A model generated the notes under the pieces. That model was not told the origin of the DNA and made no database searches. It worked only from the letters and a program-made list of their open reading frames with translations. DNA of 64,000 nucleotides from positions 62,001-126,000 of the IMG/VR virus record IMGVR_UViG_3300019458_000021. One strand, 5' to 3'. This document shows, in pieces, positions 2,461 through 25,800 of the stretch; position 1 is the stretch's first letter; each line of letters starts with the position of its first letter. The position numbers and the translations under genes were made by a program.

Positions 2461-2490
2461 TTGCAATGAGCAACAAACGTAAGGTAAGGT
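2461..2490 (+). promoter_or_regulatory. Possible sigma70-type promoter for the transglycosylase/dsbA unit
   Basis: TTGCAA-18 nt-TAAGGT in the intergenic gap; weak -10. Confidence 0.35.
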
Positions 2491-2544
2491 TGTTCCAGCT
2501 TAACACGCTATGGGGCTTTCATTCACTCTGAAAAGGAGGAACGC

Positions 2545-3330
2545 ATGAAGATAGCAATATGCCTCGCCGTGATGCTTATGATTCTTTCATCGTTCATCAC
2601 TGCACCTTGCACGGCTCAGATGAACTACGAAGGAGCTGTTACCGTTTCAAGAAACGGCAAGTCCTTCACATTTTCAAGCATCGCGGTTCAAAATCTAAAA
2701 GTGTTGCGAGAAGTTGCAGTGGATATGGGCGCAGACGTTCACATTCCAACTCTTCAAGCAATCATGATGACTGAAACACATGCAGGAACCGGTGGGTCAA
2801 TTGGATTGCCGCGCGCGCACCCAACTCGTAGATCATACGGTTGGATGCAGTTAACGATTCCAACAGCAAGAGTGCTGTTCCGAGACCTCGCCGACTTGCG
2901 GATGAAGTATTTTGGCGAGCGGGTTCTGAAATCTGTGAAAGACGCAGAAATCAAGAAACTGCTTCTAACAGACTGTCGGCTCAACGTCCGTCTTGGGATT
3001 CTGTTGTACGTTCAATATCTCGATATGGTCAAGAAGGAATGGGCGCGAGCTGTTGCTGGATATAACATGGGTATCGGCAATGCCTTGAAGCGAGCTCACG
3101 CGCCAAAGAGCGTTTATGTTGTCAAGGTTCGGAACTGGATACCTTTGGTAACTGCAATGACTGAAGAGGTTACGAAAGCGGAACAAATTGTTCTGGTTGC
3201 CTATTCGTCAACCTTGCCGGAAAATTGGCTGGGCATAAAAGGTACTTTACAAGGAGAACAAGATGGCCAAAAAGAGCAAAAAGCAGCCGAAACCTTCACA
3301 AGAGCAGAGTGTTACAAAAGTTGTCAATGA
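2545..3330 (+). CDS. Exported lytic transglycosylase (SLT family)
   Basis: Signal peptide MKIAICLAVMLMILSSFITAPCTA; motifs AIMMTETHAG (catalytic E), SYGWMQL, AVAGYNMG; SD AGGAGG. Confidence 0.85.
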   Translation: MKIAICLAVMLMILSSFITAPCTAQMNYEGAVTVSRNGKSFTFSSIAVQNLKVLREVAVDMGADVHIPTLQAIMMTETHAGTGGSIGLPRAHPTRRSYGWMQLTIPTARVLFRDLADLRMKYFGERVLKSVKDAEIKKLLLTDCRLNVRLGILLYVQYLDMVKKEWARAVAGYNMGIGNALKRAHAPKSVYVVKVRNWIPLVTAMTEEVTKAEQIVLVAYSSTLPENWLGIKGTLQGEQDGQKEQKAAETFTRAECYKSCQ

Positions 3331-3613
3331 CACCGACGAACGTCGCAAATTTAAGACAACGCTTGCAACGCTGACGCACTACATGCAACAGATTGATGAT
3401 GCAAGAGAGGCGATCAAGGAGACTATTGCTGATTTGTCAGGTGCAACTGGAATCGACAAAAAACAAATCAAGAAGCTAGCTACAACGATGTATAAGCATA
3501 ACTATGCAACGTTGCAGGAAGAGAACAGACACTTCGAAGCGCTGTACGAAACACTCGTCGAAGGACGTTTGACGCAAACAGACGACGAAGACCAAGAGAA
3601 ACTCGCCGCATAA
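3263..3613 (+). CDS. dsbA: T4 DsbA-like dsDNA-binding protein
   Basis: QIDDAREAIKETIADL...GIDKKQIKKLATTMYKHNYA...EENRHFEALYET pattern; SD AGGAG inside the upstream gene. Confidence 0.65.
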   Translation: MAKKSKKQPKPSQEQSVTKVVNDTDERRKFKTTLATLTHYMQQIDDAREAIKETIADLSGATGIDKKQIKKLATTMYKHNYATLQEENRHFEALYETLVEGRLTQTDDEDQEKLAA

Positions 3614-3616
3614 AGT

Positions 3617-3650
3617 GAGAGCCGCTCGAAAAGCGGCTCTCTTCCTTTTC
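3617..3650. terminator. Intrinsic terminator between convergent genes
   Basis: GAGAGCCGCT-CGAAA-AGCGGCTCTC 10-bp stem followed by TTCCTTTT. Confidence 0.8.
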
Positions 3651-3654
3651 CAAA

Positions 3655-6024
3655 TTAGAACTCTGAGTATGTCAGAACAATTGCGTTGATCGTTGCATCA
3701 GCCGCACCGGCACCGGTACCACCGCCATTATTCGCTCCACGCACAGTGATCGTGTTTGCACCACTCACATAACCGTTGTAAGTGAAACCTGCAGGAACTG
3801 TCGATGGAAGACCAAGTACGACAGGGTCGCCAACAACCGCACCGGTAACGGTAATCGTGTTTGTGCTGTCTCCAACCGCGCCGTCCACAATCGCACCAAA
3901 CGTCACACTTTGTGTGCCTTTGAATGCAGCAACGTTAAATGTGCGTGATGTTGTGATATCGCCACCGCCTGTCAGACCGACACCAGCCGTGAGGCCGACA
4001 CCAGAGTGATCAACGTGCTCATTTGCAACAAAGTTCATCAACGCGTCGTGATCGACGCCAGCTGGAAGAACGTTAGCTTCAATTGTGGCTGGACCATCAG
4101 TGTACACCAGCTCAACACTTGCTGTATCTGTCAATGTTGTGCCGACCGCATCTTGAGCTGCTTCTGCGAAGTCGGTAACTTGGGAAGAAGTAATCGCAAC
4201 CGCAACAGATGCTGCGGTTGTCAAACGACCCTGAAGATCGACTGAAAACGTTGCAATATTAGCAGCATCACCGTAAGAGGCAGTAATAACACCTGTTGCT
4301 GGTAAGTCGACATTTGGATTAGCTGCAACTCCGTTACCGTTCGTTACAGTAATTGTGCCACCGGTAGATGTTAAAGTGCGTGTTGCAACTGTACCAGCAC
4401 CGGTGCGTGCCACAAGGCCTGTCGTTGCAAGGGCTGCTACTGCATCAAGATCTGCATCCCACGCTTGAACTGTCACACCAATCGAAGCCGCCGTTAGAGC
4501 AGTCATCGGGCCCGGAGGACCACCAAATGTTGCCACAGGAGCACCTGCTACCATCATTGTCATGACGCCCGGAGGACCAAACGAAACACCTGTCGTTGGA
4601 TCTGCTGTTGACCACAATGCCATGCCTGGTGTTGATGCGTAGCCACTAAATGTTGTGATACCACCAGCATCAATACGAACTTTTTGAGCGCCAGCAATTG
4701 CAAAGCTAACTTCACCAGCGCCACTGTCGTACATGCCTTTTGTTGCATCACTTACAAATGTGTATGCTGGAAGAAGGGCCGTACCTGCTGCCAGAGCAAT
4801 CGTAGCACGATTAACCCACAATGCGCCATTGTATTGAAGGACGTTATTCGCTACAGGTGCTGTGATTGTTACATCCGTTAGGTCTGTCAATGCAAGGTTT
4901 TCTGATGTAAGGATTGGGAACGCCGATCCAACAACACCAACAAGCCACTGATCTGTACTCTCATCCCATTCAAGAATGGCATTTGGAGGACCACCACGAT
5001 CGACTTGTAGACCAGAGCTGGCAGGGTCGAATTGTACAAGAGAAATTGGCTGATCAACACCGTTGTCAACAGTTACAGTTCCTGTGAACGTTGCGCCTGT
5101 TAGGTTTGCCTTCAAAGCAAGCCCTGCTGCCAATTCTGCATCTGTTGCCAGTGCACTAAGGGCGATACCACCATCAGCAAGTGCCGTACCGGCACCGGCA
5201 ACAGTCACAACATTACCGTTTACGCCAACAAAATCGTCAAGTTTTGTTGCAATCGCAGCAGCAACTTCCGCATCAGTTGCAAGACCTGTCAATGGTGTGC
5301 CACTGTCAATTAGAGCACCACCAGCCGTGAGTGTTGGAACATTGCCAACAGTTGCACCACCAACAAGTGGAATGAATGAACCAGCAACAGCTGCGATATC
5401 AACGAAACCTATACCGTCATTTGTAAATTGCCACGTGTCTGTTGCTTCATTCCAACGGATGGAAACATCTAGAGAAGCACCTCGATCGACAGAAAACAAA
5501 GCATTTGCAGGGCCGGCAGCTCCCTTGTTCATGTAAAACTGTGAATTTGGTGTACCGTCAACATCGGCCTTCAATGCAAGAGCGTTGTTCATATCCGTAA
5601 AAGTTGGATAATTAACGAGGGCCGCAGTTGGATCTGCAACAACACGATTCAGTGGACGAACGTCATTGATCAACCCCGATGTGATCTGTGTTGTTGATGA
5701 AGACATATAAACCGCAGCCAAGGGCAAGTTGCCTGTTGGTGGTGCAGGGATCGAAGGAGCTGCAGCGGTCGTACCATGTGTCAGAACCACGGAAGCAGAG
5801 CTACTCAGAGAAACTAATGTCCAGCGATTGAGAGACCCTGGTGCCGGAATGGAGGGAGAATTACCACCTGGAAATTCTACAACTTCGTCATCAGCATTCC
5901 AAAAAGACCCGGCTCGGATCCTAACTGTCAAGTTTGGAATGTCTTGTGCAGTAACAGATAACGGCGCAAAGTTAGCACCAATTTCCTTGTCTGCTTCACC
6001 TTTGAGTGGAACAGAGTTTGACAT
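3655..6024 (-). CDS. Tail fibre/appendage structural protein (~789 aa)
   Basis: Ala/Gly/Thr/Val-rich; two VDRG...W.E.TD.W motifs, two LATDAE.AA repeats, DLTDVTIT...VLQYNGALWVN motif; true ATG at 6024 with SD AAGGAG and upstream TAAATA. Confidence 0.75.
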   Translation of the reverse strand: MSNSVPLKGEADKEIGANFAPLSVTAQDIPNLTVRIRAGSFWNADDEVVEFPGGNSPSIPAPGSLNRWTLVSLSSSASVVLTHGTTAAAPSIPAPPTGNLPLAAVYMSSSTTQITSGLINDVRPLNRVVADPTAALVNYPTFTDMNNALALKADVDGTPNSQFYMNKGAAGPANALFSVDRGASLDVSIRWNEATDTWQFTNDGIGFVDIAAVAGSFIPLVGGATVGNVPTLTAGGALIDSGTPLTGLATDAEVAAAIATKLDDFVGVNGNVVTVAGAGTALADGGIALSALATDAELAAGLALKANLTGATFTGTVTVDNGVDQPISLVQFDPASSGLQVDRGGPPNAILEWDESTDQWLVGVVGSAFPILTSENLALTDLTDVTITAPVANNVLQYNGALWVNRATIALAAGTALLPAYTFVSDATKGMYDSGAGEVSFAIAGAQKVRIDAGGITTFSGYASTPGMALWSTADPTTGVSFGPPGVMTMMVAGAPVATFGGPPGPMTALTAASIGVTVQAWDADLDAVAALATTGLVARTGAGTVATRTLTSTGGTITVTNGNGVAANPNVDLPATGVITASYGDAANIATFSVDLQGRLTTAASVAVAITSSQVTDFAEAAQDAVGTTLTDTASVELVYTDGPATIEANVLPAGVDHDALMNFVANEHVDHSGVGLTAGVGLTGGGDITTSRTFNVAAFKGTQSVTFGAIVDGAVGDSTNTITVTGAVVGDPVVLGLPSTVPAGFTYNGYVSGANTITVRGANNGGGTGAGAADATINAIVLTYSEF

Positions 6025-6065
6025 AGGGTTTCTCCTTGAAAAGTCGCAATTATGTCGAGTGGGTG

Positions 6066-6072
6066 TATTTAT
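6066..6072 (-). promoter_or_regulatory. Late promoter motif (ATAAATA) for the fibre gene
   Basis: TATTTAT on + strand, 42 nt upstream of the minus-strand ATG. Confidence 0.65.
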
Positions 6073-6089
6073 TCGAAAGGGGCGGAATG

Positions 6090-6118
6090 TTGATGTTTTG
6101 CGAAGAGTCGGGTATAAT
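6090..6118 (+). promoter_or_regulatory. Sigma70-type promoter of the DNA polymerase operon
   Basis: TTGATG-17 nt-TATAAT, then SD AGGAG and ATG at 6141. Confidence 0.75.
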
Positions 6119-6140
6119 CGGCGCCTTCTAGGAGTAGTGG

Positions 6141-8852
6141 ATGAGCTATATTTCGGCAGCAACAATAGAAGACGACGTCATTGTGTGGGAGCGTGATGAG
6201 AACGGACAGAGAATCGAAACAGTTTACACAGCTCCTTACCTGTTCTACTACAACGATCCCAAGGGAAAACACGAAACAATCTACGGCGATAAAGTCTCTC
6301 GTGTAATTTGCACAAGCAAGCGTGACTTTGAAGATAAGGTTGGTCTCTATAAAGGCCGAGGACATACAGTTTATGAGACAGACATCGAGCCTCACTTCCG
6401 TGTGTTATCAACGGACTACTACAACAAACCTGCACCTAAACTTAACGTAACATTTTACGATATTGAAGTCGACTACGATCCAGCGTTAGGCTTTGCAGGG
6501 GTCGAAAATCCTTACGCAAAAATCAACTCAATGTCGCTATTCCATAAATGGTCACAGGAGCTAATCGTACTAGCTGTTCCTCCGGAGTCTGGATGGACGG
6601 AAGAACGGCTAATCGAAGAGATGACCAAGCAGGTTCCTGATGCACCGATCCCGAAAGAATACAAACTCACAATTATTCTTTGCAAAGAAGAGACGGAACT
6701 GCTCCTGAATTTTCTCGACCAGATAGAGGATTCAGACGTGTTGTGTGGATGGAACAGCTCAATGTTCGATTCACCATACACAGCAAAGCGACTTGAAAAT
6801 CGCCTGGGCAAACGTTACATGGCGAAGATGGATTTCAATGGAACACGACTTCCTTGGTTTAGAAAGGTTCCATCTCGAAAGATTCGCAACCGTGACGGTA
6901 CACCAAAGATCATCGGAACAACGCTTGAAACGGCTGGTCGGATCATGGCTGACTACATGGAGTTGTATAAGAAATACGAAGCGGGAGAACGAGCTTCGTT
7001 TAAGTTGGCTGCTATTGAGCAGGAGGTCGGTTTGAATCTTCCGAAACTCGAATACAAAGGAACCTTGCACAACCTCTACCGAAACAACTTTGCATTCTTC
7101 ATTCGATACAACATTCGAGACACCGAAATCCTTCACGGATTCGAACGTGTGCTTGGCTACGTTGAACTTGCAAACCAAATGTACCACTTGTCAACGGGTG
7201 TGTTCAAACATGTGACAGGAACGCTGAAGCTCGTAGAAGCATCAATTCTTAACTATTGCCATCATGTTGTGAATAAGGTAGTTCCGAATAGCGTCTCACC
7301 AGAAAACGATCGCCAAATTGATGGAGCTTTAGTCTTGTTCCCACAGATTTCCCTCCAAGAATTCACAGGCTCGATTGACATCAACTCTCTGTATCCAACA
7401 GCAATCCGCTCAATCAATATTTCCCCGGAAACACTCAAAGGCCAGTTTGATGAGTTCAATCGCGCTGTTGAAGAAATTCGCATGCGCTCGTTTGCAACAC
7501 TCACACTTCGACTTGAAACTGGTGAAGTGTTAACAAAAGAAGCTTCCGAATGGCGTGAGTGGCTTAAAGAACGGATGTGGTCTGTGTCTGGCTACGGGAC
7601 TGTGTTTGATCAAAACCAACAAGGAATTGTTCCGTCTATTCTTGCAGACTGGTACAAGCAACGTAAAGAGTATCAGAAACTGATGAACGAAGCTCTTACA
7701 CAAGGCGAGAAAGAAAAGGCTGACTACTATGATCGTTTACAGTATGTGTACAAGATTAAGCTAAACTCAGCCTATGGAGCTCTGACAAACATCAACTTCC
7801 GTTTCTTTGACTTGCGGTTAGGGGAGAGTGTGACAGCTACAGGTCGAATGATTCTCCGACATCAGTGTCGGAAGGTCGCTGAGTTCCTCGATGGAGAGTA
7901 CGACGTCGACTTTCCACAATATGAGACAATCAAAGATTGTAACGAGGCGAACAACAAAAAAGGTGTCCCACACGAACTTGCCTTGAATGGTCCAAAATTC
8001 AATGGTAACTTTATGTGCGAATCGGTAATTTACGGAGATACGGACAGCACATACTTTAAGACACACGCAACAAACGTTGTAGATGCAGTGAAAATTGCCG
8101 ATCGGGTTGCACTTGAGGTCAACAACTCGTACAAACCGTTTGTACAAGAGGTGTTTTTGTGTAATCCAGGCTTCGATGATCTCGTTAAGTGTGGTCGAGA
8201 AATTGTGACTGATAAAGGAATTTTTGTTGACAAAAAGCGTTACATTCTTCATGTTGTTGACAAAGAGGGTAAACCATCGGATAGTATGAAAGTCATGGGT
8301 CTTGATACCAAGAAGACCACGCTACCAAAGCACGTGGCCGACGAATTGAATAAATACGTCGGGATGTTCCTAAAAGGAATGCCTTGGGAACAAGTAGCAG
8401 AATTGATAGTCAACTATAAGGATACTCTTCGCAGTCAAGCTAAAGAAGAGATTCAGTTGATTGGATTACCGAAAGGGATCCAGGAAGTAGAAGACTATCA
8501 ACAGCAGTACAAGCGGTTGGGTGATCAAGTTCGATTACCTGGCCACGTGGCTGCAGCAATTCACTACAATTTGCTGTTGAAACATTTCGATGATCGTGAG
8601 AGTATGCCGATCATGTCGGGTATGAAGATCAAAGTCTTCTATCTGACACAGATGAACGGCAAGTTCAAAAGTATTGCTTTGCCAACTGACATCGAAGTTG
8701 TTCCACAGTGGTTTTTTGACAACTTTGAAGTAGACATAGATGCGCATATTGAGAGGTTGGTTGACAATCCGATGCAGAACATTCTAAAAGCAATCGGAAA
8801 GCGAACACCAACTCGACACGACTTGATGGTTGAAGACGTTTTTGGCTTCTAG
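6141..8852 (+). CDS. gp43: Family B DNA polymerase (T4 gp43-like)
   Basis: Exo motifs FYDIEVD, GWNSSMFDSPY, YNIRD; pol motifs DINSLYP, KIKLNSAYG, YGDTDS, KKRY; C-terminal VEDVFGF resembles a clamp-binding tail. Confidence 0.97.
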   Translation: MSYISAATIEDDVIVWERDENGQRIETVYTAPYLFYYNDPKGKHETIYGDKVSRVICTSKRDFEDKVGLYKGRGHTVYETDIEPHFRVLSTDYYNKPAPKLNVTFYDIEVDYDPALGFAGVENPYAKINSMSLFHKWSQELIVLAVPPESGWTEERLIEEMTKQVPDAPIPKEYKLTIILCKEETELLLNFLDQIEDSDVLCGWNSSMFDSPYTAKRLENRLGKRYMAKMDFNGTRLPWFRKVPSRKIRNRDGTPKIIGTTLETAGRIMADYMELYKKYEAGERASFKLAAIEQEVGLNLPKLEYKGTLHNLYRNNFAFFIRYNIRDTEILHGFERVLGYVELANQMYHLSTGVFKHVTGTLKLVEASILNYCHHVVNKVVPNSVSPENDRQIDGALVLFPQISLQEFTGSIDINSLYPTAIRSINISPETLKGQFDEFNRAVEEIRMRSFATLTLRLETGEVLTKEASEWREWLKERMWSVSGYGTVFDQNQQGIVPSILADWYKQRKEYQKLMNEALTQGEKEKADYYDRLQYVYKIKLNSAYGALTNINFRFFDLRLGESVTATGRMILRHQCRKVAEFLDGEYDVDFPQYETIKDCNEANNKKGVPHELALNGPKFNGNFMCESVIYGDTDSTYFKTHATNVVDAVKIADRVALEVNNSYKPFVQEVFLCNPGFDDLVKCGREIVTDKGIFVDKKRYILHVVDKEGKPSDSMKVMGLDTKKTTLPKHVADELNKYVGMFLKGMPWEQVAELIVNYKDTLRSQAKEEIQLIGLPKGIQEVEDYQQQYKRLGDQVRLPGHVAAAIHYNLLLKHFDDRESMPIMSGMKIKVFYLTQMNGKFKSIALPTDIEVVPQWFFDNFEVDIDAHIERLVDNPMQNILKAIGKRTPTRHDLMVEDVFGF

Positions 8853-8861
8853 GAGTTTACG

Positions 8862-9827
8862 ATGAAGTGGTATGAACTGCTCATGATTGCAGTTTTAGGC
8901 GTGTTCCTTAACACGAACGGGTACGCCTTCGAAACCGAGGCTGTGCAAGAGGTGGAAATTTCGACGGTCGTGCAACCTCCACATCTTGAAAGGATCACCG
9001 TTGAGACGCAGGTCGTTCCTTTCAAGATCAATGCCAAATACGCACTTGTAATCGATCAAACAACAGGCGAAATCCTTTACGCAAAGGGCGCGGACACAAT
9101 TGTCCCAATTGCTTCAATCACCAAGCTGATGACTGCTGTTGTGACGCTTGATGCTAGTCTCGATCTTGAAGAAACGATCCAAATCTCACAGGAGGAAGTT
9201 AATGCGACAATGCTTCGCGGTCGGGTAACAAGCAAATCGTTGCCGATGGGTGCGACATTGTCCCGCGCTGAGCTTCTCCATGTTACGTTGATGAATTCTC
9301 AGAACCGTGCAGCCGTGGCACTGGCTCGAACCTACCCAGGCGGTACAGAAGCGTTCGTTGCCGCTATGAACCGCAAAGCTGAGATGCTCGGGATGAAAGA
9401 TACCAACTTCACAGATCCAGCTGGCCTGTACAATACAAACGTGTCCTCAGCAATTGATTTAGTAATCCTCCTCAGACATGCTGAGGATTATGTTTTGATT
9501 CGTGACTTCAGCACATCAGAATCGTTTGCGCTATCGATGTACTCAAAAAAGAAAAGGCGTCCACACCTTGTGAAGTTCGGAACAACAAACCGACTTGTTC
9601 GCAACGATAGCTGGGATATCGTTGTTCAAAAGACTGGTTATATTCGCGATGCTGGTCACTGCGTTGCCATGACGGCAAGAACTGTCACAAACACCATTTC
9701 GATCATCCTGTTGAACACAACGAACAACACTGCGCGCGCCAATGATGCGATTCGAATCAAACACTACATCGAGACAGGTGAAATTCTTCAACCAATGAAG
9801 GCAAAACGCAAAAAACGTCGAGCATGA
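8862..9827 (+). CDS. pbpG: D-alanyl-D-alanine endopeptidase, peptidase S11 (PBP7/PbpG-like)
   Basis: Signal peptide; intact SxxK (PIASITKLMTA), SxN (MNSQNRAA) and KTG (QKTGYI); YPGG..AFV.AMN.KA..LGM and YIETG segments as in PbpG. Confidence 0.92.
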   Translation: MKWYELLMIAVLGVFLNTNGYAFETEAVQEVEISTVVQPPHLERITVETQVVPFKINAKYALVIDQTTGEILYAKGADTIVPIASITKLMTAVVTLDASLDLEETIQISQEEVNATMLRGRVTSKSLPMGATLSRAELLHVTLMNSQNRAAVALARTYPGGTEAFVAAMNRKAEMLGMKDTNFTDPAGLYNTNVSSAIDLVILLRHAEDYVLIRDFSTSESFALSMYSKKKRRPHLVKFGTTNRLVRNDSWDIVVQKTGYIRDAGHCVAMTARTVTNTISIILLNTTNNTARANDAIRIKHYIETGEILQPMKAKRKKRRA

Positions 9828-10267
9828 AGACACTTTACACATCCTATTACGCACGGTCTGGCAAGCGACCAGGCGCAATCTCGATCAGTGCCAAAGCCCC
9901 ATTCTTCTACAAGGGTGCTGCTCGCATTGACCTTGCTCCGTCATGGGAACTACTTCGTGCCTACAAAGACGGAACGGTCGATGCATATGGTTACACGGAA
10001 TGGTTCGGACGCTTGTTAAAGGAACGAAACCTAACTCCAAAGGCGGTGATCGATAGTCTTCCAGAACACTCAATCATGTTGTGTTACGAAAAGGTTGGTG
10101 ACTTTTGTCATCGTCACATTGTCGCTGTTTGGTTGAATCAATCCGGGTTGGCGCAGGTTTATGAGCTGGAAAAAGATGGGTCATCGATGCAATCGCCCAC
10201 AAGTATCGATGATCTTATTCACTTGTTGGCCGTTGATGTGAAGGAGGAAACATCAGACAATACCTGA
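9824..10267 (+). CDS. DUF488-like protein
   Basis: YTSYYA, ISIS, LAPSWELL and LCYEK..DFCHRHIVA motifs. Confidence 0.75.
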   Translation: MKTLYTSYYARSGKRPGAISISAKAPFFYKGAARIDLAPSWELLRAYKDGTVDAYGYTEWFGRLLKERNLTPKAVIDSLPEHSIMLCYEKVGDFCHRHIVAVWLNQSGLAQVYELEKDGSSMQSPTSIDDLIHLLAVDVKEETSDNT

Positions 10268-10288
10268 TTGAACAATAAAGGAGTTCAA

Positions 10289-11002
10289 ATGAAACTCTCC
10301 CCCCAAGACCTAGCCTACATTCTCAACGTCGTCCAGACGGCCGCACTGGTTAAGATCGACAAGATCATTATCGAACCAGGCAAGATTCGCGGTGCAGATG
10401 AAGATCGTTCCATTGTAATGTTCCAAACTGACAACGTTCCAGCATTTGAGTTCGGTTCAATCGGCTTAAACCGCATCGATGTGTTACAATCTCGATACGA
10501 TATCGCTAAGAGCTGTGATAATGTTGAGGTAGAAGTGATTCCGGCTGGTGATTTTGCACGCGCATTAGTTTTCAAAGGCAAGGGAGTCAAGTTAGATTAC
10601 CGAGCCGCAAATCCAGCAACACTACACGACTCTACTCCCAAGCAAATGAACGATCCCGCCAAGTACCGTATCCAAATGTCAGCGGACGCAGTATTGAAAA
10701 TGGTTCGTGGAGCTTCGGCCATGAAGACCGACGACGTTCAATTTGTTAGCGACGGCAATGGAGTGGTGTTCAATATGGAAGATGTTGTGAACCGTGACAT
10801 GTTCACATGTGAGTTTGCACAAAAGACAGATGTAGCGAGCCTCGATGGTTCCCCCATCAAATTCTCGTATACATACCCGATCAAGAACCTCTTGGTTCTG
10901 TTGAAGCAGAACCCGGAAGGATACATTTATCTGACAGAACGAAAAGGGATTCTAAAGGTTGTTGTCAACCAACTCGATCTGTACATCCCACCAAGGACAT
11001 AA
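10289..11002 (+). CDS. Probable DNA polymerase sliding clamp (gp45-like)
   Basis: ~237 aa, alternating beta/alpha pattern, position between polymerase and RNase H; ATG 10289 after SD AAGGAG. Confidence 0.55.
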   Translation: MKLSPQDLAYILNVVQTAALVKIDKIIIEPGKIRGADEDRSIVMFQTDNVPAFEFGSIGLNRIDVLQSRYDIAKSCDNVEVEVIPAGDFARALVFKGKGVKLDYRAANPATLHDSTPKQMNDPAKYRIQMSADAVLKMVRGASAMKTDDVQFVSDGNGVVFNMEDVVNRDMFTCEFAQKTDVASLDGSPIKFSYTYPIKNLLVLLKQNPEGYIYLTERKGILKVVVNQLDLYIPPRT

Positions 11003-11003
11003 T

Positions 11004-11465
11004 ATGTGGCCACTTAAAAAGCCAAGCCGACCAACGATTGAAGAGCAACTTGCGACTATTGGCAATCGCCTCGACGCTCAAGACGCGGAAAAACAACGAT
11101 TGGAACGCGAGAAGGAAACACTTGAGCGAAAGAATAAGGAACTGTTGCAATCAATTGAAGAACTACGAGCAACGGTTACGCTCTTGGCAGAAGAAACAAA
11201 CAAACGCAAAGCTCGTTATGAAGCAAAAGAACCGTGGATCGAGATTGCAAGTGATGGGTTTGATGAAGTCAAGGGAATTGCACTTGGCCTAGATTGGAAC
11301 GATGCAATGATCCAGTACCTGAAAGACAATGGTATCACTGGGTCAAGTGACGAGGACGTGATGCGTAAGTACATTGCATTCCTGTACGAAGACCTAGTAG
11401 GAAAACTTGAAGCAGCCGTCACGGAACAATCAAGCTCTAAAGGCAAGATTGCAGATTTCGAATGA
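11004..11465 (+). CDS. Conserved phage hypothetical protein, coiled coil
   Basis: ATG at 11004; N-terminal coiled coil then EPWIEI...LDWNDAMIQYL..NG. Confidence 0.75.
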   Translation: MWPLKKPSRPTIEEQLATIGNRLDAQDAEKQRLEREKETLERKNKELLQSIEELRATVTLLAEETNKRKARYEAKEPWIEIASDGFDEVKGIALGLDWNDAMIQYLKDNGITGSSDEDVMRKYIAFLYEDLVGKLEAAVTEQSSSKGKIADFE

Positions 11466-12373
11466 TGAAATATCTTGTGTTTGACATCTCGAACATGCTG
11501 TATCGGACGTTCTTCGCCCACAAAGACCAATCAGATACAACAATCGCTGGTCTTGCAACACACTCTGCATTGATGACACTCAACAAGTACTTCCGACAGT
11601 ACAAGCCGGATCGTGTCGTTATGGCGTTTGATCACTCAAGCTGGCGGAAAGATTACACAGCAAGTGAATTGTGCATTTCTCAGAAACCGTATAAGGGCAA
11701 TCGGCGCAAGGACATGTCGCCTGCTCAGCAGGCAAAATACGAGCGGTTCTGCGGCCACCTGAAAGAGTTTGAGTCATTGATTACAAACCACTCAACGATC
11801 ATTTCTCTCGCTGGTGAGAAACTCGAAGCCGACGACCTGATTGCAGGATTTTGTGAAGCACACCAGAACGATGATATCACACTAATCAGTAGTGATAGTG
11901 ACATGCTTCAACTCCTACGCTTCCAGAATGTTAAGATCGTTTCACCGGCAACAGACAAGGAAGTAACGTTGGAAGAATATAACCACGATCCGAAGTACTA
12001 TCTGTTTGTCAAGTGCATGCGTGGTGATTCAACTGACTACATTCAATCTGCACTGCCACGGGTTCAATCAAAGCGACTCGAAAAGGCGTACAAGGATCCT
12101 TTCGAGCGGGTTCAGCTGATGCAAGAGTTCTGGATCGACCCGAAAACAAAGACAGAGTTTAAGGTGCAGGATCTCTACGAAGAAAACATCATGCTAATCG
12201 ATTTAACACAGCAACCCGATCCAGTTCGCCGCCGAATTTTTGCTGTTGTTGACGAAGCTGTGAAGAAAGAGCGAAAGTATTCGCACTTCCATCTGATGCG
12301 ATACTTGGGTAAGTATGAGCTTGAAGTGATTGCAAAACAGTTGGATACCTTTCTACCACTGTTGAGCCAATGA
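11462..12373 (+). CDS. rnh: 5'-3' exonuclease / RNase H (T4 Rnh, FEN-like)
   Basis: YLVFDISN, AFDH.SWRK, YKGNR, LEADDLIA, ISSDSDMLQL, GDSTD.I motifs. Confidence 0.92.
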   Translation: MMKYLVFDISNMLYRTFFAHKDQSDTTIAGLATHSALMTLNKYFRQYKPDRVVMAFDHSSWRKDYTASELCISQKPYKGNRRKDMSPAQQAKYERFCGHLKEFESLITNHSTIISLAGEKLEADDLIAGFCEAHQNDDITLISSDSDMLQLLRFQNVKIVSPATDKEVTLEEYNHDPKYYLFVKCMRGDSTDYIQSALPRVQSKRLEKAYKDPFERVQLMQEFWIDPKTKTEFKVQDLYEENIMLIDLTQQPDPVRRRIFAVVDEAVKKERKYSHFHLMRYLGKYELEVIAKQLDTFLPLLSQ

Positions 12374-19815: not shown

Positions 19816-22800
19816 CTAGTCATCAAATATACCAGCAACTTCCAACACACGAATACCGTGCAAAGCTACCCAGGAGGTCTTAAAGATCTCACGGTATTTA
19901 GATTTCACGGACAATGCATCTAGCAGACAGTTAAACCAAATGTTGTTGACGTGTTCTGTACCAAATGTGTTGTAGATTGCATCCATTGCTGTGGCAATAT
20001 TCTCAGACGTGTCAAACGAGAACGTTGCAAAGAACGAGTTGATGTCTAGTGGATAAAAGTCGTTGTTCGGATCCTCGAGATACGCAATGACCGTTTGCAG
20101 CGACAATGTACCATCGGTGAATGACTGATCAACACCAAGACCGTATTGTGTATCCGTGCCAGAAATCTCATCATACAGCGTGCGCTCCAACGCTGGGACA
20201 CGAACGCTTGGATCAGCGAGCTTGTAGCCAATCAACGATTCCGTTAGACGGTCCCACAGACGGCGGTCAATGTTAGCCCCCTGGCTGCGACGAATTGCAA
20301 GCCATTCTTCATGCTTGTTTTTGAGGTTCAACGGTGTCGGACCGTCATCAAGAGTGTCACGAAGTGTCAGATCCCGTGTAAATCGCACTTCATAGCGATC
20401 ATCCGTTCGAATAAAGTCCGCAGCCTTACGAATGATCGCTTGGCGATAGAACACTGGAATAACAGGGTATTGATCATAGATCCAAGGCGCTGAATAAATG
20501 ATGCCAAATGTGATACCGTATCCGAACCGGTCCGCCAAAGTTGGATCATCTTCTGGACGCTGTACAACAAGATATAGCGTTGGAATCTGTTCGATCTGTT
20601 GGGCAACTTGGATCAAAGGCAATGCATCATTACGATCCTCGATCTTGTTCAATCGATTTTCAACCCAAAAGTAGAACAATGAACGCGTAACGTTGTCAAT
20701 TGTTACAACACGTTGTGTGTATTCGGTCTGTTGCTTGAATTGCGTGTGTGTTGTTCCGTCATCTGTCGTATCTGGGTCAAACGTAATCTGTTCTTCTGTG
20801 AGAACAGGAATTGGACGTACGACCGTCACAATATCGTTGATTGTGAGAGAGGTTGAATTCGAGATCTCCAGCGAATTATCAACAACAAGACCTGTTTCCA
20901 CGACAACTCCGTTCACATACATGTTGACAACATCACCAGAAGCAAACAAGTCGCTGTCAAGCGTAAATGTCGCAGGAACCGGAAGTGTATACCCGTCAAT
21001 AATTGGAATGATTTTTTGCGACACAATCGGTTTACGCACCCAAGATGTTGCTTTGAATGCTGGAACAACTTCTAGTGTTCCAATGCCGGCCGTACCGTAT
21101 TCGAACGGCGTACCATTTTCCGTGTCGCTTAGTTTGGTAATTGTTGATGTTGTACCCAGTGTTGCAAAATACTTTGTTGAACCAGCAAGCGTTGTAGTTG
21201 TTGTTAATGGAAGTTGCAGGTCGAATGTTGTGATCACAATCGTGCTTTCCACAGCTTCAACTGTTGTTGGTACACCTGTGAGAGCAGTTTGCATCAAAGC
21301 TGCAAGCTGTGTAACTGTCGTTGATGCAGAAGTAATTGTGATCGTGTAGTCGATTGCCGCTCCACCATTCACAGCGAGGGTAAAGTCATAGCTGCCAATA
21401 GCCAAATTTGTCAACGTTGTTGGTACTACTGCCGGTGTATCATAGAAAGTAACCGTTGCAATGGCTGGTGATGTTTCAAACACCGCTGGAACGACCGTAA
21501 TCGTTACAACCGCTGTCATCGAAGTTGCTAAACTGTCAAACAAGTCTGGATTAGCACCCGTTGTCGGACGAGTTGGTGTAATTGTTCCATTAACGACTAA
21601 CACTACTTCATCGCCTATGCTCAACGTGTTCACGCCAGCAATTTCATCGGTGCCGACGTTCACAGTCGCTGAAATTGGTGTACGTTCACGGAAGAAAGTT
21701 GTCATTCGTGGGGTACCAGTGATCTTGTCGTTTGACGCAATTGCTGTGTCATTGGTCTCATCAACAGCTGTTGCAGCCCATTCCTCAGGTGTGAATTGGC
21801 TTTCAACCCATTGATACACACGAACGTCGCCCCAATCCGCCAAACGACCCCAGTTGTAGAGGCGGTCGTTGAGATCCGGTAGGACAACATCGTCATAGTA
21901 CGGACGATATGCAAGCGTTGCTGTATCAAGCCACACTGTTTGTGTTTCAGCCTGATTCCATGGCTGTTGTGAGATGTCATTTGGATTCAACGTATTCGTA
22001 TACAGAGCTGGATCGACAGCATTTTGAATGTCAACATTATGAACGGCTGTGGGTGAGTGATATCCTCGAGCTGGATCCCACATCGGAACATTGGTCAGCA
22101 CCGTTCCGGCAACGTAATCGATGATCTTCGCAGGACTATTCTTTGTCTTACCTGGGTTGATCGTGAAGATCATGATAATGTCAGTGAAACCAGTCGTTGT
22201 AAACCGGATCACTTCCGAATTGATTCTTGAGAACTCATCTGCACCTGTGCCTTCAATCATATACGCTGTTGTATAGTTGCGTAAATCACCAGCAACAACA
22301 AGATCACGGTTGGTTACACGAACTGTGTCTGCAAAAGTTGGCAGCTGTATGTAGATATCACCGGCAACAGTTGTAATTTTGACTGGTACGTCAGTTGTCT
22401 GAACCCATTGTGTTCCATCCCAAATGAAGATGAAGCCAGTCGACTTTTCATACCACATGTCAACCGTTTCTTCGCCAGCTGTTGGAACAACATCAGAAGC
22501 ATAGATTGTTGTGAGAGTTGTCACCTGACTGTCTAAAAACAGGATTGAATTATCGAGCAACACCCGTTGCTCGGGCGCATCAATCCAACGGTCTTGATTG
22601 CTAAATGTTACAATCTTGAATCCCATTGCCTCATCAGCCTCAACCTGTGCCGTGTCTGATGCTTCTGTATCTGTCAAAAACTCGAGACGAACGTCATCGA
22701 CTTGGCCATCAGACGCAAACAATTTGATTTCTGGATACACACGCGGACGAACATCTCCAAATTGAGCAATCTTCCAAGCCCAAAACTCGTCGATTTTTGC

Positions 22801-25800
22801 GTCAACAAATCGACGAGAGTTGATGTACGCCTTGATTGCATTTGTTGATCCTTTTGCTTGGATCATACCGCGGTAGAAGACAAACTGTGTTTTTGCATTT
22901 GTGTTCAACAGATCCAAATATGGCTGTGAACCGGCACGGTAACCAAGCAATTGACGAGAGTTGAGACCAACCTTCGTAAGTTCCTTCAGCCCGTATGTGT
23001 CATAGTAGTTCTGCGAATCGACGGTCTGGCCTTCAATGTTGCGACGGTATTTGCCGCCGAGCAAGTAATATCCACCTAATGTTGGACGAAGTGAAAAATC
23101 GTTCTTTTCGTAGAAGTCCATGCCAAATCGCTGTGCTGTTAATCCGAGGAATGAATCGTACAGAATTTGATTGCTTGTTGTGTAATCGTTGAACAAACAA
23201 ATGTGCTCGTATCCTTCGATAAACAAGTGCGCTCCACCCATGTGAATATAGTTGTATGGGTCAGCGGTAGAGATTGATGGTGGAACAGTGTCGTTAGGAA
23301 GTTCTGTTCGCATTGCAAGACGGCTCTGTTTGTCTTCACGGAACACCAACAACTTATCAGCACTGATTGGCCGTGCATACTGGTCAAAGATCGTTTGCTG
23401 AACACGAATGTCTGCATACGGTCCTTGAACAACGTCCGAAAGAACACCTTGAGGCGTGTCAATCCACACATTGTTCCGAGCCGCATTCAACTCAAACGAT
23501 GGGAATGAAATCGGACGGCTTTGTGGAGCAATAAACATCACCCCACTGCCGTTTGTGAGAACGTCAACGATGCTTGCGTTCAACATGCGTGTGGTTGATA
23601 ACCTGAACTCACCTGACACGCCGGTCGGATTATAGTAGTATGGTGTGTTCGCGATGAACGGTTCTGGCAGAAGACCTGTTGATGACATTAAGATAGCAGT
23701 TCCTGGTTGCCACATTGGCACCTGACCTGAGAACGTCATGGTATTTGCGGCCAAGTCTGTCACAGTGAATTGATATTTGTCAGCAACGCTCATGCGTGTA
23801 CGACGTAGTCGGAACGCCCAATCGATGAATCGTTCTTCTTCAAGCTGCCAGTTAACTGTGCGTCCTGTTTCCGGATCCAGCTCTGTGAAGTCGCTCAAAT
23901 TGTACAAGACGCCAATGTCTTTCTGGTAGGCTGCGTAGCCGTCGATGATGTTAATCAGTCGCTGAATACCAGCGATCGAGTAAGGAGGAATAAACGTTCG
24001 AACCTTTGTCTTGTCCAGTGCATAGTGATACCAGATTTCTGTTGAAGGGCCCGCACCTCCAAACACTTGGAATGATGAATCGACTTGACCAACATTAAGA
24101 TCTCCTGTACCAGTTGTTGTCCACACAAAAGGAACACCAGCCAGCGCTGCATTTGGACTTTCTGCAACTCGGAACTGTCGATTGTTCAGTCGGATAATGT
24201 ACAATGGTTGATTCGGAACCAACGGAGCTGGTAACAATTTTGATGAAGTTACGAACACAAGATCGCCAGTTTGCCACGGTAGAACACTTAACGGAAAGTC
24301 AATCAAACCATTTGCGATTGAACTTGGTAGTGGTTCAAGTGTTGTGATTCTTGTCCTGTCAACCGATGGATCGTAAATCGAAGCAACAACGGTATAGGAA
24401 CCATCATTTCCTGTTGAGTTGATAACGTCAAATTCTTGATCCGGAGGAAAATCTGTCACATGATCACCATCAACCTCAAGCAGATTCGATACAGACAGTG
24501 CACCTGTAATTGTATAGCGGAAAATCGTTGCAGTGTTCGTAAGAATATCAACCGTGAACGGATAGTTGATCACGTCATAGTAGGAAACGTCGCGAGGAAT
24601 TGACGCAAGCGTTTCGATTTCAAGTTTCCACTGAGTTTGACTGTTGTACTGAACAAGTTGTGGTGGCATATTCAAGACAACGACTTCAAACGCATCTGAC
24701 CACATGTCTTTGATCACACCCATATTTGCGAGCAATACGTTGTAGTCTTGTGGACCAACATCAAAGTACTTGTTCGAAACTTCGAGAGTTGATGTGTCAA
24801 TAATGCCGGAGAATTGATAGGACAATAATGGATCCCAAGCTGTCCACAAAATACGGAATTCTTTGTTCGTGTCGTAGCCAACGAATCGGTCATAGTTCAC
24901 ATACCACTGGTTCAATCCTCGTGCTAGGAATGAGACGTCATTGTTGTAAATGTCGCCGTGGAACAGTGCGTCTTCGTGGTTGTACACCTGACAGAATGTT
25001 GGATCGATCTGAAGGTTGTTGACACGTATAAAATCAATGCCCCACGCATAGTGCATGAAGCGAACAGGTTGCATTCGAAATGCAATCACTAGTGGATCGT
25101 AAACATGCTCACCGGAAACCAACCACTGCCATTCTACAGGACCGCCGTCTCCAAACGCATAGTTCGCTCCAGGGGCAACAATCTCAGTCGACAAACTTGT
25201 GAAGAACGAGCGAACAATTGATGAAACGGTAGTGTAATACGGTGGCAACAGATCATCCGGTGCATAGTTGCCTTGAATTACACCGTCACTGATGTTGACG
25301 GAGAAATAGTTGTACACCAGCGTCACTTGGCCTGGTAGACCAGTTCCCGGCGAACCATCCGGAGCAGTACCACCCACAGGAATGGTACCAACACGAATAT
25401 TCTCCCACATACCAGTTGTTGTGCCGTGGTTGTAAATCCATCGACGGGTGCCGTTGGTTTCAAGGTAGAACGCATCCCACCAGTCAGGTTTGTCCGCAAA
25501 TCCCTGGAGTTTCCATGGCTCGAGATGTGGGTAAGGTGTATTGTACCATAGCGTGTAAAGCTGTTGCCAAGACCCTGCCAACCCAGGCGAAATCGAGAAC
25601 GTTGGTGGTGTAGTCAAGTTGCTATACACATAGTTCCATGTGAACGCATCTGACGGATTATACAACACATTTTCGAACGGTGCACGAATACGGCGAGCGG
25701 CGACAAATGCAAAGAATTGGTCTTCGGTATATTCATCGAAGAATGCTTGTTCACTTACATCGGGAGTTAACGATGAGTAATCGAATGCCGTTTCAGCGAA

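What the first reader, a model, noticed from the sequence alone, without database searches (positions are those of the whole stretch)
2545..9827. Possible two-enzyme periplasmic wall-remodelling system (glycan cutter plus cross-link cutter)
Two separately encoded, signal-peptide-bearing peptidoglycan enzymes with complementary chemistry lie in the early/replication block, not in a lysis cassette. In bacteria, lytic transglycosylases and PBP7 cooperate in wall expansion and turnover. Inference: the phage may loosen or enlarge the host sacculus during replication, alter muropeptide signalling, block superinfection, or use holin-independent lysis.
Basis: inference. Interest (0 to 1): 0.6.

Follow-up and report, generated by a model that had tools for sequence, protein, structure and literature searches.

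The report
Jumbo phage exports two wall-cutting enzymes
An uncultivated ~350-kb cave phage carries, on either side of its DNA polymerase gene, two secreted enzymes, one cutting the sugar strands and one the peptide cross-links of the bacterial wall; they are separate from its ordinary lysis enzyme and mostly conserved across a whole clade of related giant phages, which suggests wall remodelling during infection, though nothing shows they work as an obligate pair.

Summary
Both genes are real. Window 2545-3330(+) encodes a 261-aa SLT/goose-lysozyme-fold lytic transglycosylase-like protein. Window 8862-9827(+) encodes a 321-aa PbpG/PBP7-type DD-endopeptidase (Peptidase_S11, 1.4e-53; SITK, SQN and KTG intact). 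Both start with Sec-type signal peptides.

They flank dsbA-like, a reverse late fibre gene, and DNA polymerase B, in the replication block of a T4-like jumbo phage from a cave metagenome (237 kb held; the same protein is on a 352-kb contig).

The phage has a separate cytoplasmic GH108 + PG_binding_3 lysozyme about 38 kb away, so these two are probably not the endolysin.

In 18 distinct related phages, 12 carry both genes, 5 only PBP7 and 1 only SLT. The pairing is frequent and probably ancestral, but not obligate. PBP7 always sits directly after the polymerase gene. In relatives without the fibre gene, SLT-dsbA-pol-PBP7 is one tight co-directional string behind a conserved sigma70-like element, with no T4-type late motif.

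Phage PBP7s form a clade of 71 clusters beside betaproteobacterial PbpG. They share two derived traits: SxN is Q/N/H instead of E/D, and the C-terminus is polybasic.

Best reading: wall-remodelling accessory enzymes made before the late phase. Their purpose is inferred, not shown.

The parts
2461..2490 (+). Sigma70-like promoter-like element upstream of the SLT-like gene (TTGCAA, 18 nt, TAAGGT)
   Evidence: It is weak against the E. coli consensus. It aligns in register with a conserved GTTG(C/A)T ... TAAGAT/TATACT/TATAGT block upstream of the SLT gene in 8 relatives. There is no T4-type late motif within 130 nt in the query or in 14 relatives.
2545..3330 (+). SLT-like lytic transglycosylase (P0001, 261 aa): signal peptide, catalytic domain (about residues 45-215), disordered acidic tail
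   Evidence: Pfam SLT at threshold. Invariant E77, S97-Y-G-x-M-Q102 and Y173-N-x-G176. Slt/MltE/g-lysozyme fold. Only SLT domain in the 237-kb record.
2545..2616 (+). Predicted Sec signal peptide of the SLT-like protein (residues 1-24, CTA|Q)
   Evidence: Read from the sequence. AxA-type sites follow a hydrophobic core in all 16 homologues. In the model, helix 2-15 is followed by a low-confidence linker.
3263..3613 (+). DsbA-like small DNA-binding or transcription protein (P0005); overlaps the 3' end of the SLT gene by 68 nt
   Evidence: phrog_639 'transcriptional regulator'. Homologues match Pfam Phage_DsbA.
3617..3641 (.). Strong G+C-rich hairpin terminator between the convergent SLT-dsbA unit and the fibre gene
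   Evidence: 10-bp stem with 7 GC pairs followed by a T-rich tail.
3655..6024 (-). Fibre-like structural gene on the opposite strand (late gene), inserted between dsbA and pol
   Evidence: phrog_697 structural protein. Late motif AATAAATAC lies 49 nt upstream, at 6065-6073. The gene is absent from this position in relatives L019, L026-L029 and L032.
6090..6118 (+). Sigma70-like promoter (TTGATG, 17 nt, TATAAT) 22 nt before the DNA polymerase start
   Evidence: 10 of 12 matches. A GTTGNNN-17-TATAAT element sits at the same distance in relatives that carry the fibre insertion.
6141..8852 (+). Family-B DNA polymerase (P0003)
   Evidence: Pfam DNA_pol_B and exo domain, phrog_262. 42% identical to Xanthomonas phage XacN1 polymerase.
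8862..9827 (+). PbpG/PBP7-type DD-endopeptidase (P0002, 321 aa), 9 nt after the polymerase stop codon
   Evidence: Peptidase_S11 1.4e-53. 6muq/6azi 1e-51. S85-x-x-K88, S146-Q-N148 and K257-T-G259 are invariant in 39 phage homologues.
8862..8927 (+). Predicted Sec signal peptide of the PBP7-like protein (residues 1-22, GYA|F)
   Evidence: Read from the sequence. N-terminal hydrophobic segments occur in all 71 phage-clade homologues; some look like uncleaved signal anchors.
9798..9824 (+). Polybasic C-terminal tail of the PBP7-like protein (7 K/R in the last 9 residues)
   Evidence: Trait of the phage clade. Mean K+R in the last 15 residues is 6.35, against 3.16 in 49 bacterial hits and 2.4 in 80 chromosomal betaproteobacterial homologues.

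Best explanation
The two genes encode periplasm-targeted peptidoglycan-cleaving enzymes. They are accessory 'host-wall remodelling' genes of a clade of T4-like jumbo phages of Betaproteobacteria. They are not the phage's lysis enzyme.

The PbpG-type enzyme would cut D-Ala-mDAP (4-3) cross-links. The SLT-like enzyme would cut glycan strands. Both are most likely transcribed by the host RNA polymerase together with the replication genes. In fibre-less relatives they lie in one co-directional string. In this window they lie in two units with the same type of promoter-like element.

Inferred purpose: after host gene shut-off, during a long latent period, the phage supplies its own wall 'space-maker' and strand-trimming activities. 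This would keep the sacculus expandable and turning over while very large virions are built. The host versions are short-lived in E. coli.

Shown: gene identity, intact catalytic motifs, export signals, conservation and synteny, and a separate endolysin candidate. Inferred: expression time, enzymatic specificity and physiological purpose. The confidence figure applies to the whole statement including purpose. That these are exported wall enzymes made before the late phase and distinct from the endolysin I hold at about 0.65.
For: Identity and intact active sites.

Export signals.

A separate GH108 + PG_binding_3 lysozyme without signal peptide lies at G000:C1:25778-26347 and also occurs in relative G008. 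No other SLT, Phage_lysozyme, Amidase_2, M23, GH19, M15_4, NlpC/P60, GH25 or Phage_lysozyme2 domain was found.

PBP7 follows the polymerase gene directly in every context examined.

Expression class: a sigma70-like promoter precedes pol, and PBP7 starts 9 nt after the pol stop codon. A conserved sigma70-like block precedes SLT, with no late motif. The T4-type late motif NATAAATAN is 20-fold enriched upstream of genes and marks the structural genes.

Conservation: a deep clade of 71 clusters down to about 45% identity with all motifs kept.

Literature: E. coli PBP7 alone, when overproduced, suffices as the only endopeptidase for growth and cuts only 4-3 cross-links (bioRxiv 10.1101/2021.02.12.430937). 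PBP7 and MltD are degraded by Prc/NlpI once protein synthesis stops (PMC10671308). The related jumbo phage RsoM2USA has a 270-min latent period (PMC8504454).
Against: There are no expression data: no RNA run holds this phage. The promoter-like element before SLT is weak in the query itself (3 of 6 matches in the -10 hexamer). Each gene is missing from some relatives, so neither is indispensable. The nearest isolates, XacN1 and RsoM2USA, lack both genes at these positions and still complete long infections. The genome held is only about 68% complete. Nothing links the enzymes to cell enlargement. Constant export of wall hydrolases could equally serve lysis.
Confidence: 0.4

Rival explanations
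1. Lysis helpers. The exported enzymes gradually lower cross-linking and shorten the strands. The cytoplasmic GH108 lysozyme, once released, then destroys the wall of slow-growing, highly cross-linked cave bacteria quickly and completely. In the extreme version they give holin-independent lysis, like secreted endolysins.
For: Both enzymes are muralytic and exported. The polybasic tail of the PBP7-like enzyme recalls cationic C-termini of lysis proteins that act on the outer membrane (own knowledge). T4-like phages scatter their lysis genes, so position says little (own knowledge). PBP7 has been linked to lysis of non-growing E. coli (own knowledge: Tuomanen and Schwartz 1987).
Against: No late-promoter motif precedes either gene, in the query or in relatives. 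PBP7 is coupled to the polymerase gene. No holin or spanin is adjacent. The signal peptides look like ordinary cleavable Sec signals, not the weakly hydrophobic SAR type.
Confidence: 0.25
2. The two genes are not a system. They are unrelated accessory genes that sit at two insertion-prone borders of the conserved dsbA-pol core. PBP7 is a long-kept host-derived gene with a role of its own, and the SLT-like gene is separately dispensable.
For: Each occurs without the other: 5 relatives have PBP7 only and 1 has SLT only. This needs at least 3 SLT losses and 1 PBP7 loss on the polymerase tree. Other variable genes occupy the same borders: the fibre gene, DUF488, a dCMP deaminase and Cpn60. In the query the two genes lie in separate transcription units.
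Against: The earliest-branching relative (L032) and 12 of 18 phages keep both genes. In fibre-less relatives they share one co-directional string with a single promoter-like element. Their chemistries are complementary, and in E. coli Slt70 and PBP7/8 are reported to cooperate (own knowledge: Romeis and Holtje 1994).
Confidence: 0.2
3. Conflict or signalling function. The altered wall or the released anhydro-muropeptides could block superinfecting phages, blunt a host envelope-stress or abortive response, or feed wall-recycling products into phage metabolism.
For: T4-type phages export early periplasmic proteins for superinfection exclusion (own knowledge: Imm, Sp). A review proposes that jumbo phages modify peptidoglycan and capsule against rival phages (PMC7824862, section 3.4.10). 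A lytic transglycosylase plus an endopeptidase is the enzyme pair that yields monomeric anhydro-muropeptides (own knowledge).
Against: No specific feature supports it. No inhibitor-like or sensor domains are present. The same enzymes are ordinary housekeeping activities of the host.
Confidence: 0.1

Closest known systems
Bacterial PbpG (PBP7/8) murein DD-endopeptidase, Peptidase_S11 (solved: 6muq, 6azi)
   Same: Single-domain low-molecular-weight PBP of about 300 aa with a signal peptide and SxxK, SxN and KTG motifs. It aligns over residues 52-312 at 1e-51. The nearest cellular relatives are chromosomal betaproteobacterial pbpG genes at 42-51% identity.
   Different: It is phage-borne, always directly 3' of the DNA polymerase gene. 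It belongs to a separate clade with SH-aLRT 99. The middle residue of SxN is Q/N/H in 69 of 71 phage proteins, against E/D in 79 of 80 bacterial ones. The C-terminus is polybasic. The query has an extra linker of about 28 residues after the signal peptide.
Family-1 lytic transglycosylases (Slt70/Slt, MltE) and the goose-type lysozyme fold; phage example phiKZ gp144
   Same: The catalytic Glu followed by Ser/Thr, the G-x-M-Q and Y-N-x-G motifs, and the fold.
   Different: Sequence similarity is very weak: Pfam at threshold and no PDB hit even with a family profile. It is a small single domain with a preceding beta-hairpin and a disordered acidic tail. It carries a Sec signal, unlike the virion or endolysin transglycosylases of phiKZ-type phages. 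The family was seen only in this phage group (17 clusters).
Cooperation of Slt70 with PBP7/8 in E. coli wall turnover (Romeis and Holtje 1994; recalled, not re-read here)
   Same: The same two bond specificities are brought together in the periplasm.
   Different: No evidence for contact or synergy of the phage proteins was obtained. Each phage gene can occur without the other.
Secreted and SAR endolysins (phage P1 Lyz, phage 21 R, Oenococcus fOg44 Lys44)
   Same: A muralytic phage enzyme exported by the Sec system independently of a holin.
   Different: The signal looks like a cleavable AxA type with a strongly hydrophobic core, not a Gly/Ala-rich SAR segment. There is no late motif. The genome has a separate cytoplasmic GH108 endolysin candidate.
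Jumbo T4-like phages XacN1, Xoo-sp13, Stenotrophomonas CM1/RAS14 and Ralstonia RsoM2USA
   Same: The closest isolates by DNA polymerase (36-42% identity). They share the order o1823-homologue, pol, 240-aa gene, RNase H.
   Different: Neither gene is found at these positions or by tblastn in any isolated phage. RsoM2USA has only a weak SLT-family hit 5.5 kb downstream of pol and an M23 MepM-like protein elsewhere (PMC8504454).

Membership tests
Peptidase_S11 / PbpG (PBP7)-type DD-endopeptidase | Family profile match above the curated threshold | tested here: met
   PF00768 at 182.3 bits against a cut-off of 27.6. 6muq and 6azi at 1e-51 and 3e-48.
Peptidase_S11 / PbpG (PBP7)-type DD-endopeptidase | Active-site motifs SxxK, SxN and KTG | tested here: met
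   S85-I-T-K88, S146-Q-N148 and K257-T-G259, invariant in 39 phage homologues. The middle residue of SxN differs from the bacterial E/D.
Peptidase_S11 / PbpG (PBP7)-type DD-endopeptidase | Single catalytic domain without the PBP5-type C-terminal domain; periplasmic targeting | tested here: met
   321 aa, aligned over 52-312 to the 283-aa 6muq chain. The N-terminal signal was judged by eye and hydropathy; no predictor was run.
Peptidase_S11 / PbpG (PBP7)-type DD-endopeptidase | Hydrolysis of 4-3 cross-links in sacculi; beta-lactam binding | not testable with these tools
   Needs purified protein, muropeptide analysis and Bocillin labelling.
Family-1 lytic transglycosylase (SLT domain, PF01464) | Family profile match above the curated threshold | tested here: inconclusive
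   The query scores 21.5 bits against a cut-off of 21.3 and 20.6/23.7 in the genome scan. A relative scores 37.6 bits. A family profile finds no PDB sequence.
Family-1 lytic transglycosylase (SLT domain, PF01464) | Catalytic Glu in the E-S/T motif, plus the G-L-M-Q and A-Y-N-x-G motifs | tested here: met
   E77-T78, G99-W-M-Q102 and Y173-N-M-G176. E77, M101, Q102, N174 and G176 are invariant in 16 homologues.
Family-1 lytic transglycosylase (SLT domain, PF01464) | Goose-type lysozyme-like helical fold | tested here: met
   Model pLDDT is above 90 over most of residues 50-210. The top 40 Foldseek hits are mainly Slt, MltE, MltC, MltF, g-type lysozymes and phiKZ gp144, at probability about 1.0 but E about 5e-3 and TM 0.3-0.45.
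Family-1 lytic transglycosylase (SLT domain, PF01464) | Product is 1,6-anhydro-MurNAc (transglycosylase rather than hydrolytic lysozyme) | not testable with these tools
   Needs product analysis. Sequence cannot separate the two chemistries with confidence.
Phage lysis cassette endolysin (canonical or SAR type) | Linked holin/spanin genes or late expression signal | tested here: not met
   The neighbours are replication genes. No NATAAATAN late motif lies within 120-130 nt upstream of either gene, nor upstream of SLT in 14 relatives. T4-like phages do not cluster their lysis genes, so the linkage criterion is weak here.
Phage lysis cassette endolysin (canonical or SAR type) | It is the only muralytic enzyme of the genome | tested here: not met
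   A GH108 + PG_binding_3 protein of 189 aa without signal peptide lies at G000:C1:25778-26347.
Obligate two-gene system (strict co-occurrence) | Both genes present together, or absent together, across relatives | tested here: not met
   Of 18 distinct phages with both positions visible, 12 have both, 5 only PBP7 and 1 only SLT. No SLT was found elsewhere on the 49-kb and 69-kb contigs of two PBP7-bearing relatives, but these are fragments.

The most novel reading that the evidence does not exclude
A whole lineage of environmental jumbo phages has domesticated a betaproteobacterial PbpG. It is fused to the replication operon and re-tooled: the acidic residue of SxN is lost, and a polybasic tail has been gained that could tether the enzyme to anionic membranes or shield it from the C-terminal protease Prc. 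Together with a phage-specific secreted transglycosylase, it would act as a viral 'space-maker' that keeps the infected cell's wall growing, so the cell can enlarge during a very long latent period. That would be a new class of virus-driven control of host cell size.
Probability: 0.15. Interest if true: 0.75.

Novelty: new variant of a known kind. Interest (0 to 1): 0.45.

Why it matters
Phage wall enzymes are normally thought of as entry tools (virion lysins) or exit tools (endolysins). This looks like a third use. A deeply conserved, exported cross-link cutter is wired to the replication genes of a large uncultivated jumbo-phage clade, usually together with an exported strand cutter and in addition to a normal endolysin. 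If they act during replication, they would be auxiliary genes that manage the host envelope. That bears on how giant phages sustain hosts through long infections. It also offers a natural, diverged PbpG variant for studying how endopeptidase activity is controlled. Full-text searches found no paper describing a phage-borne PbpG. No isolated phage in 50,697 records carries a close homologue. The few hits lie in unannotated fecal 'Bacteriophage sp.' contigs, in records that look like bacterial DNA or host flanks, or are weak matches in Listeria, Staphylococcus, Enterococcus and Erythrobacter phages that I did not inspect.

Tried and rejected
Complex prediction of the mature SLT-like domain with the PBP7-like protein gave no verdict (score 0.00, controls not run). 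It is neither support for nor evidence against binding.

'The SLT-like protein is the phage's only endolysin' was my working idea after five negative family scans. I rejected it when GH108 + PG_binding_3 turned up.

A lipoprotein reading of the SLT-like protein (Cys22) is rejected. There is no lipobox, and the Cys is not conserved.

A conserved 5'-UTR hairpin before the SLT gene is visible by eye in L019, L026, L028 and L034. It is not significant in the query (z = 0.18), and RNAalifold found no consensus, so I make no claim.

Megablast and tblastn against isolated phages found nothing for the region or for the SLT-like protein.

No RNA sequencing run holds the phage.

The 355-kb NCBI contig of a relative could not be scanned whole because it is not held.

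The large representative protein search was not run, as the operators advised; no claim here rests on the absence of relatives.

Full report
**What is there.** The window is bases 62,001-126,000 of a 237,379-bp IMG/VR virus record judged 68% complete. The same PBP7-like protein is also recorded on a 351,809-bp contig. The DNA is held by two cave-metagenome runs.

Within the finding's coordinates the plausible genes are:
- 2545-3330(+): P0001, 261 aa.
- 3263-3613(+): a DsbA-like small protein.
- 3655-6024(-): a fibre-like structural protein.
- 6141-8852(+): a family-B DNA polymerase.
- 8862-9827(+): P0002, 321 aa.

Upstream lie a PD-(D/E)XK nuclease and a RimB/Zn_protease-like gene. Downstream lie DUF488, two unknown genes, and a 5'-3' exonuclease (RNase H).

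**The two proteins.** P0002 is an unambiguous Peptidase_S11 protein of the PbpG/PBP7 type.
- It matches Pfam at 1.4e-53.
- It matches solved murein DD-endopeptidases 6muq and 6azi at 1e-51 over residues 52-312.
- S85-x-x-K88, S146-x-N148 and K257-T-G259 are intact.

P0001 is a much more diverged SLT-domain protein.
- It sits on the Pfam threshold at 21.5 against 21.3 bits.
- Its relatives score higher, up to 37.6 bits.
- The catalytic Glu (E77) and the two other family-1 transglycosylase motifs are invariant in 16 homologues.
- An AlphaFold model built on that alignment has pLDDT 78, and above 90 across the core.
- Foldseek returns mainly Slt, MltE, MltC/F, goose-type lysozymes and phiKZ gp144, with weak E-values of about 5e-3.

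Whether it is a true lytic transglycosylase or a hydrolytic lysozyme cannot be told from sequence.

Both proteins begin with a Lys, a hydrophobic core and a small-x-small site. So do their homologues, though a few PBP7 homologues look like uncleaved signal anchors. Either way the catalytic domains should face the periplasm. This rests on inspection, not on a predictor.

**Which phage.** The polymerase is 36-42% identical to those of the jumbo phages XacN1, Xoo-sp13, Stenotrophomonas CM1/RAS14 and Ralstonia RsoM2USA. Nothing in 50,697 isolated-phage records matches the region at the DNA level or the SLT-like protein at the protein level.

The S11 hits in that collection fall into three groups. 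Most are unannotated human-fecal 'Bacteriophage sp.' contigs at 28-36% identity. Some lie in records that look like bacterial DNA or host flanks: 'Acinetobacter phage MD-2021a' contigs annotating pbpG and dacD, and the end of Stx2 phage 1717 marked as E. coli sequence. The rest are matches in Listeria, Staphylococcus, Enterococcus and Erythrobacter phages, which I did not inspect.

**Distribution in relatives.** I gathered related loci from IMG/VR, Logan, JGI and NCBI assemblies. I scored them with family profiles and with the neighbouring genes.

The PBP7-like gene lies directly after the polymerase gene in every case. Among 18 distinct phages in which both positions are visible:
- 12 have both genes.
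- 5 have PBP7 but no SLT between the o1823 homologue and dsbA (L030, L033, L031, L021 and the P0021 contig).
- 1 (L011) has SLT, but the polymerase is followed directly by the next conserved gene.

XacN1 and RsoM2USA lack both genes at these positions.

On a polymerase tree rooted with those isolates, the environmental clade holds together (SH-aLRT 93). Its first branch (L032) has both genes. The simplest history is that both were present early, with one loss of PBP7 and at least three losses of SLT. Several nodes on that tree are weakly supported. The contigs lacking SLT are fragments, so a copy elsewhere cannot be excluded.

Strict co-dependence is not supported either.

**Origin and derived features of the PBP7-like gene.** In a tree of the 120 best database hits, 71 proteins fall on one side of a branch with SH-aLRT 99. 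All nine members whose contigs I inspected are among these 71, and all nine are phage-borne. On the other side are 49 proteins that include those named Burkholderiales.

A scan of one genome per prokaryotic species returned 80 chromosomal loci. Almost all are Betaproteobacteria, at 39-51% identity. None has phage neighbours. The gene is thus most simply an old capture from a betaproteobacterial host lineage, which also suggests the host range.

The phage clade differs from the bacterial proteins in two ways:
- The middle residue of SxN is Q (55), N (8), H (6), L (1) or K (1), and never E or D. It is E or D in 79 of the 80 chromosomal homologues.
- The last 15 residues carry on average 6.35 Lys/Arg, against 3.16 and 2.4 in the two bacterial sets.

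These are clade-level traits, not independent observations. Their meaning is unknown. Membrane or LPS binding, or protection from the C-terminal protease Prc, are guesses.

**Expression class (inferred).** The 8-mer family NATAAATAN, the T4-type late promoter, is 20-fold enriched upstream of genes. It precedes many large structural genes at -25 to -50. One of these is the opposite-strand fibre gene inside the finding, where it sits at -49.

Neither wall-enzyme gene has this motif, nor do 14 SLT homologues. The polymerase gene has a sigma70-like promoter (TTGATG-17-TATAAT) 22 nt before its start codon. The PBP7-like gene starts 9 nt after the polymerase stop codon and has no promoter-like element of its own.

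A block resembling GTTG(C/A)T-17/18-TAAGAT is conserved in register in relatives upstream of the SLT gene. The query's version is weak.

In relatives without the fibre gene, SLT-dsbA-pol-PBP7 is one tight co-directional string, and the polymerase has no promoter of its own. Relatives with the fibre insertion have a GTTGNNN-17-TATAAT element before pol. A strong terminator follows dsbA in the query.

I read this as follows. Both genes belong to the class transcribed by the host polymerase. They were originally one unit, and here that unit is split by the insertion of a late gene. No RNA data exist to check this.

**Not the endolysin.** Family scans were run in two sets.
- Scanned in the window's record plus relative G001, with G002 or G003 as the third record: one SLT domain per record, and no Phage_lysozyme, Amidase_2, M23 or GH19.
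- Scanned in six records, including the 244-kb G008: no M15_4, NlpC/P60, GH25 or Phage_lysozyme2, but a clear Glyco_hydro_108 hit.

The GH108 hit lies at G000:C1:25778-26347(-) and also occurs in G008. It is a 189-aa GH108 + PG_binding_3 protein without a signal peptide. That is the ordinary architecture of a Gram-negative endolysin.

It too is not in a cassette: its neighbours are a phosphoesterase and a PRPP synthetase. This fits the scattered lysis genes of T4-like phages. It also means that 'not in a lysis cassette' is weak evidence by itself.

About a third of the genome is missing, so further lysins cannot be excluded.

**How it most likely works.** From the families (established knowledge), PbpG-type enzymes cut 4-3 cross-links in intact sacculi. 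Family-1 transglycosylases cut the glycan strands, and cross-link removal favours strand degradation. Three literature points bear on purpose:
- In E. coli, overproduced PBP7 alone can serve as the only endopeptidase needed for wall growth (bioRxiv 10.1101/2021.02.12.430937).
- PBP7 and MltD decay through Prc/NlpI once protein synthesis stops (PMC10671308).
- A related jumbo phage has a 270-min latent period (PMC8504454).

Together with the pre-late expression signals and the separate endolysin, my preferred reading is that the phage replaces or boosts labile host wall-opening activities during a long infection. I hold this purpose at modest confidence.

Three rivals remain open:
- A pre-weakening role in lysis.
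- Two unrelated accessory genes.
- A role in conflict or signalling.

Noticed in passing
G000:C1:25778-26347 (-), about 38 kb upstream of the finding (36 kb before the window start), outside the window: A 189-aa GH108 + PG_binding_3 lysozyme without signal peptide, the likely canonical endolysin. It is flanked by a metallophosphoesterase and a PRPP synthetase, with no lysis cassette. A homologue exists in relative G008.
   Followed up: partly
Whole genome; in the window e.g. 6065-6073(-), and upstream of the genes starting at 48367, 50465, 58946 and 62523: The T4-type late promoter motif NATAAATAN is 20-fold enriched upstream of genes (31 of 151 upstream regions), typically 25-50 nt before the start codon, mostly at large structural genes.
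   Followed up: partly
window 3655-6024 (-): A late, fibre-like structural gene sits in reverse orientation between dsbA and the DNA polymerase. It is present in some relatives and absent in others. Where it is present, the polymerase has acquired its own sigma70-like promoter.
   Followed up: partly
L005 12723-16544; L008 14483-18277 (= L012 6195-9992); L030 6240-9893; L021, L029, L011: The DNA polymerase of relatives carries an insert of about 1 kb, annotated as an intein with LAGLIDADG endonuclease in L012. In L021, L029 and L011 it is split into two ORFs. The window's polymerase is uninterrupted.
   Followed up: no
G000:C1:19660-20334 (+) and 9093-9407 (-): Two further exported proteins. 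One is a trypsin-like serine protease with a signal peptide and a late motif. The other is a glutaredoxin-like protein with an Arg-Arg-containing signal. The phage therefore targets several enzymes to the periplasm.
   Followed up: partly
window 2490-2530; L019, L026, L028 and L034 upstream of their SLT genes: Hairpins lie between the promoter-like block and the ribosome-binding site of the SLT gene, with apparent compensatory changes between L019 and L026. The feature is not significant in the query, and RNAalifold found no consensus.
   Followed up: partly
window 3263-3330: The DsbA-like ORF overlaps the last 68 nt of the SLT-like ORF in another frame. The overlapped part of the SLT-like protein is its disordered, poorly conserved tail.
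   Followed up: no
window 9824-10267 (+): A DUF488-N3a gene directly follows the PBP7-like gene in the query and some relatives. It is absent or placed elsewhere in others (for example after o10959 in L032), so it is another variable accessory gene at this border.
   Followed up: no
L002/L003 (IMGVR_UViG_3300019487_000018) 11407-12137 against window 10268-11002: The otherwise identical IMG/VR contig has the 244-aa gene after DUF488 split into two frames. This is an apparent frameshift or assembly difference relative to the window's record.
   Followed up: no
window 19816-28719 (-): A very large ORF of 2,967 aa lies in a block of reverse-strand genes, some of which carry late motifs. Relatives have products of 3,248-3,684 aa at the equivalent place.
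   Followed up: no
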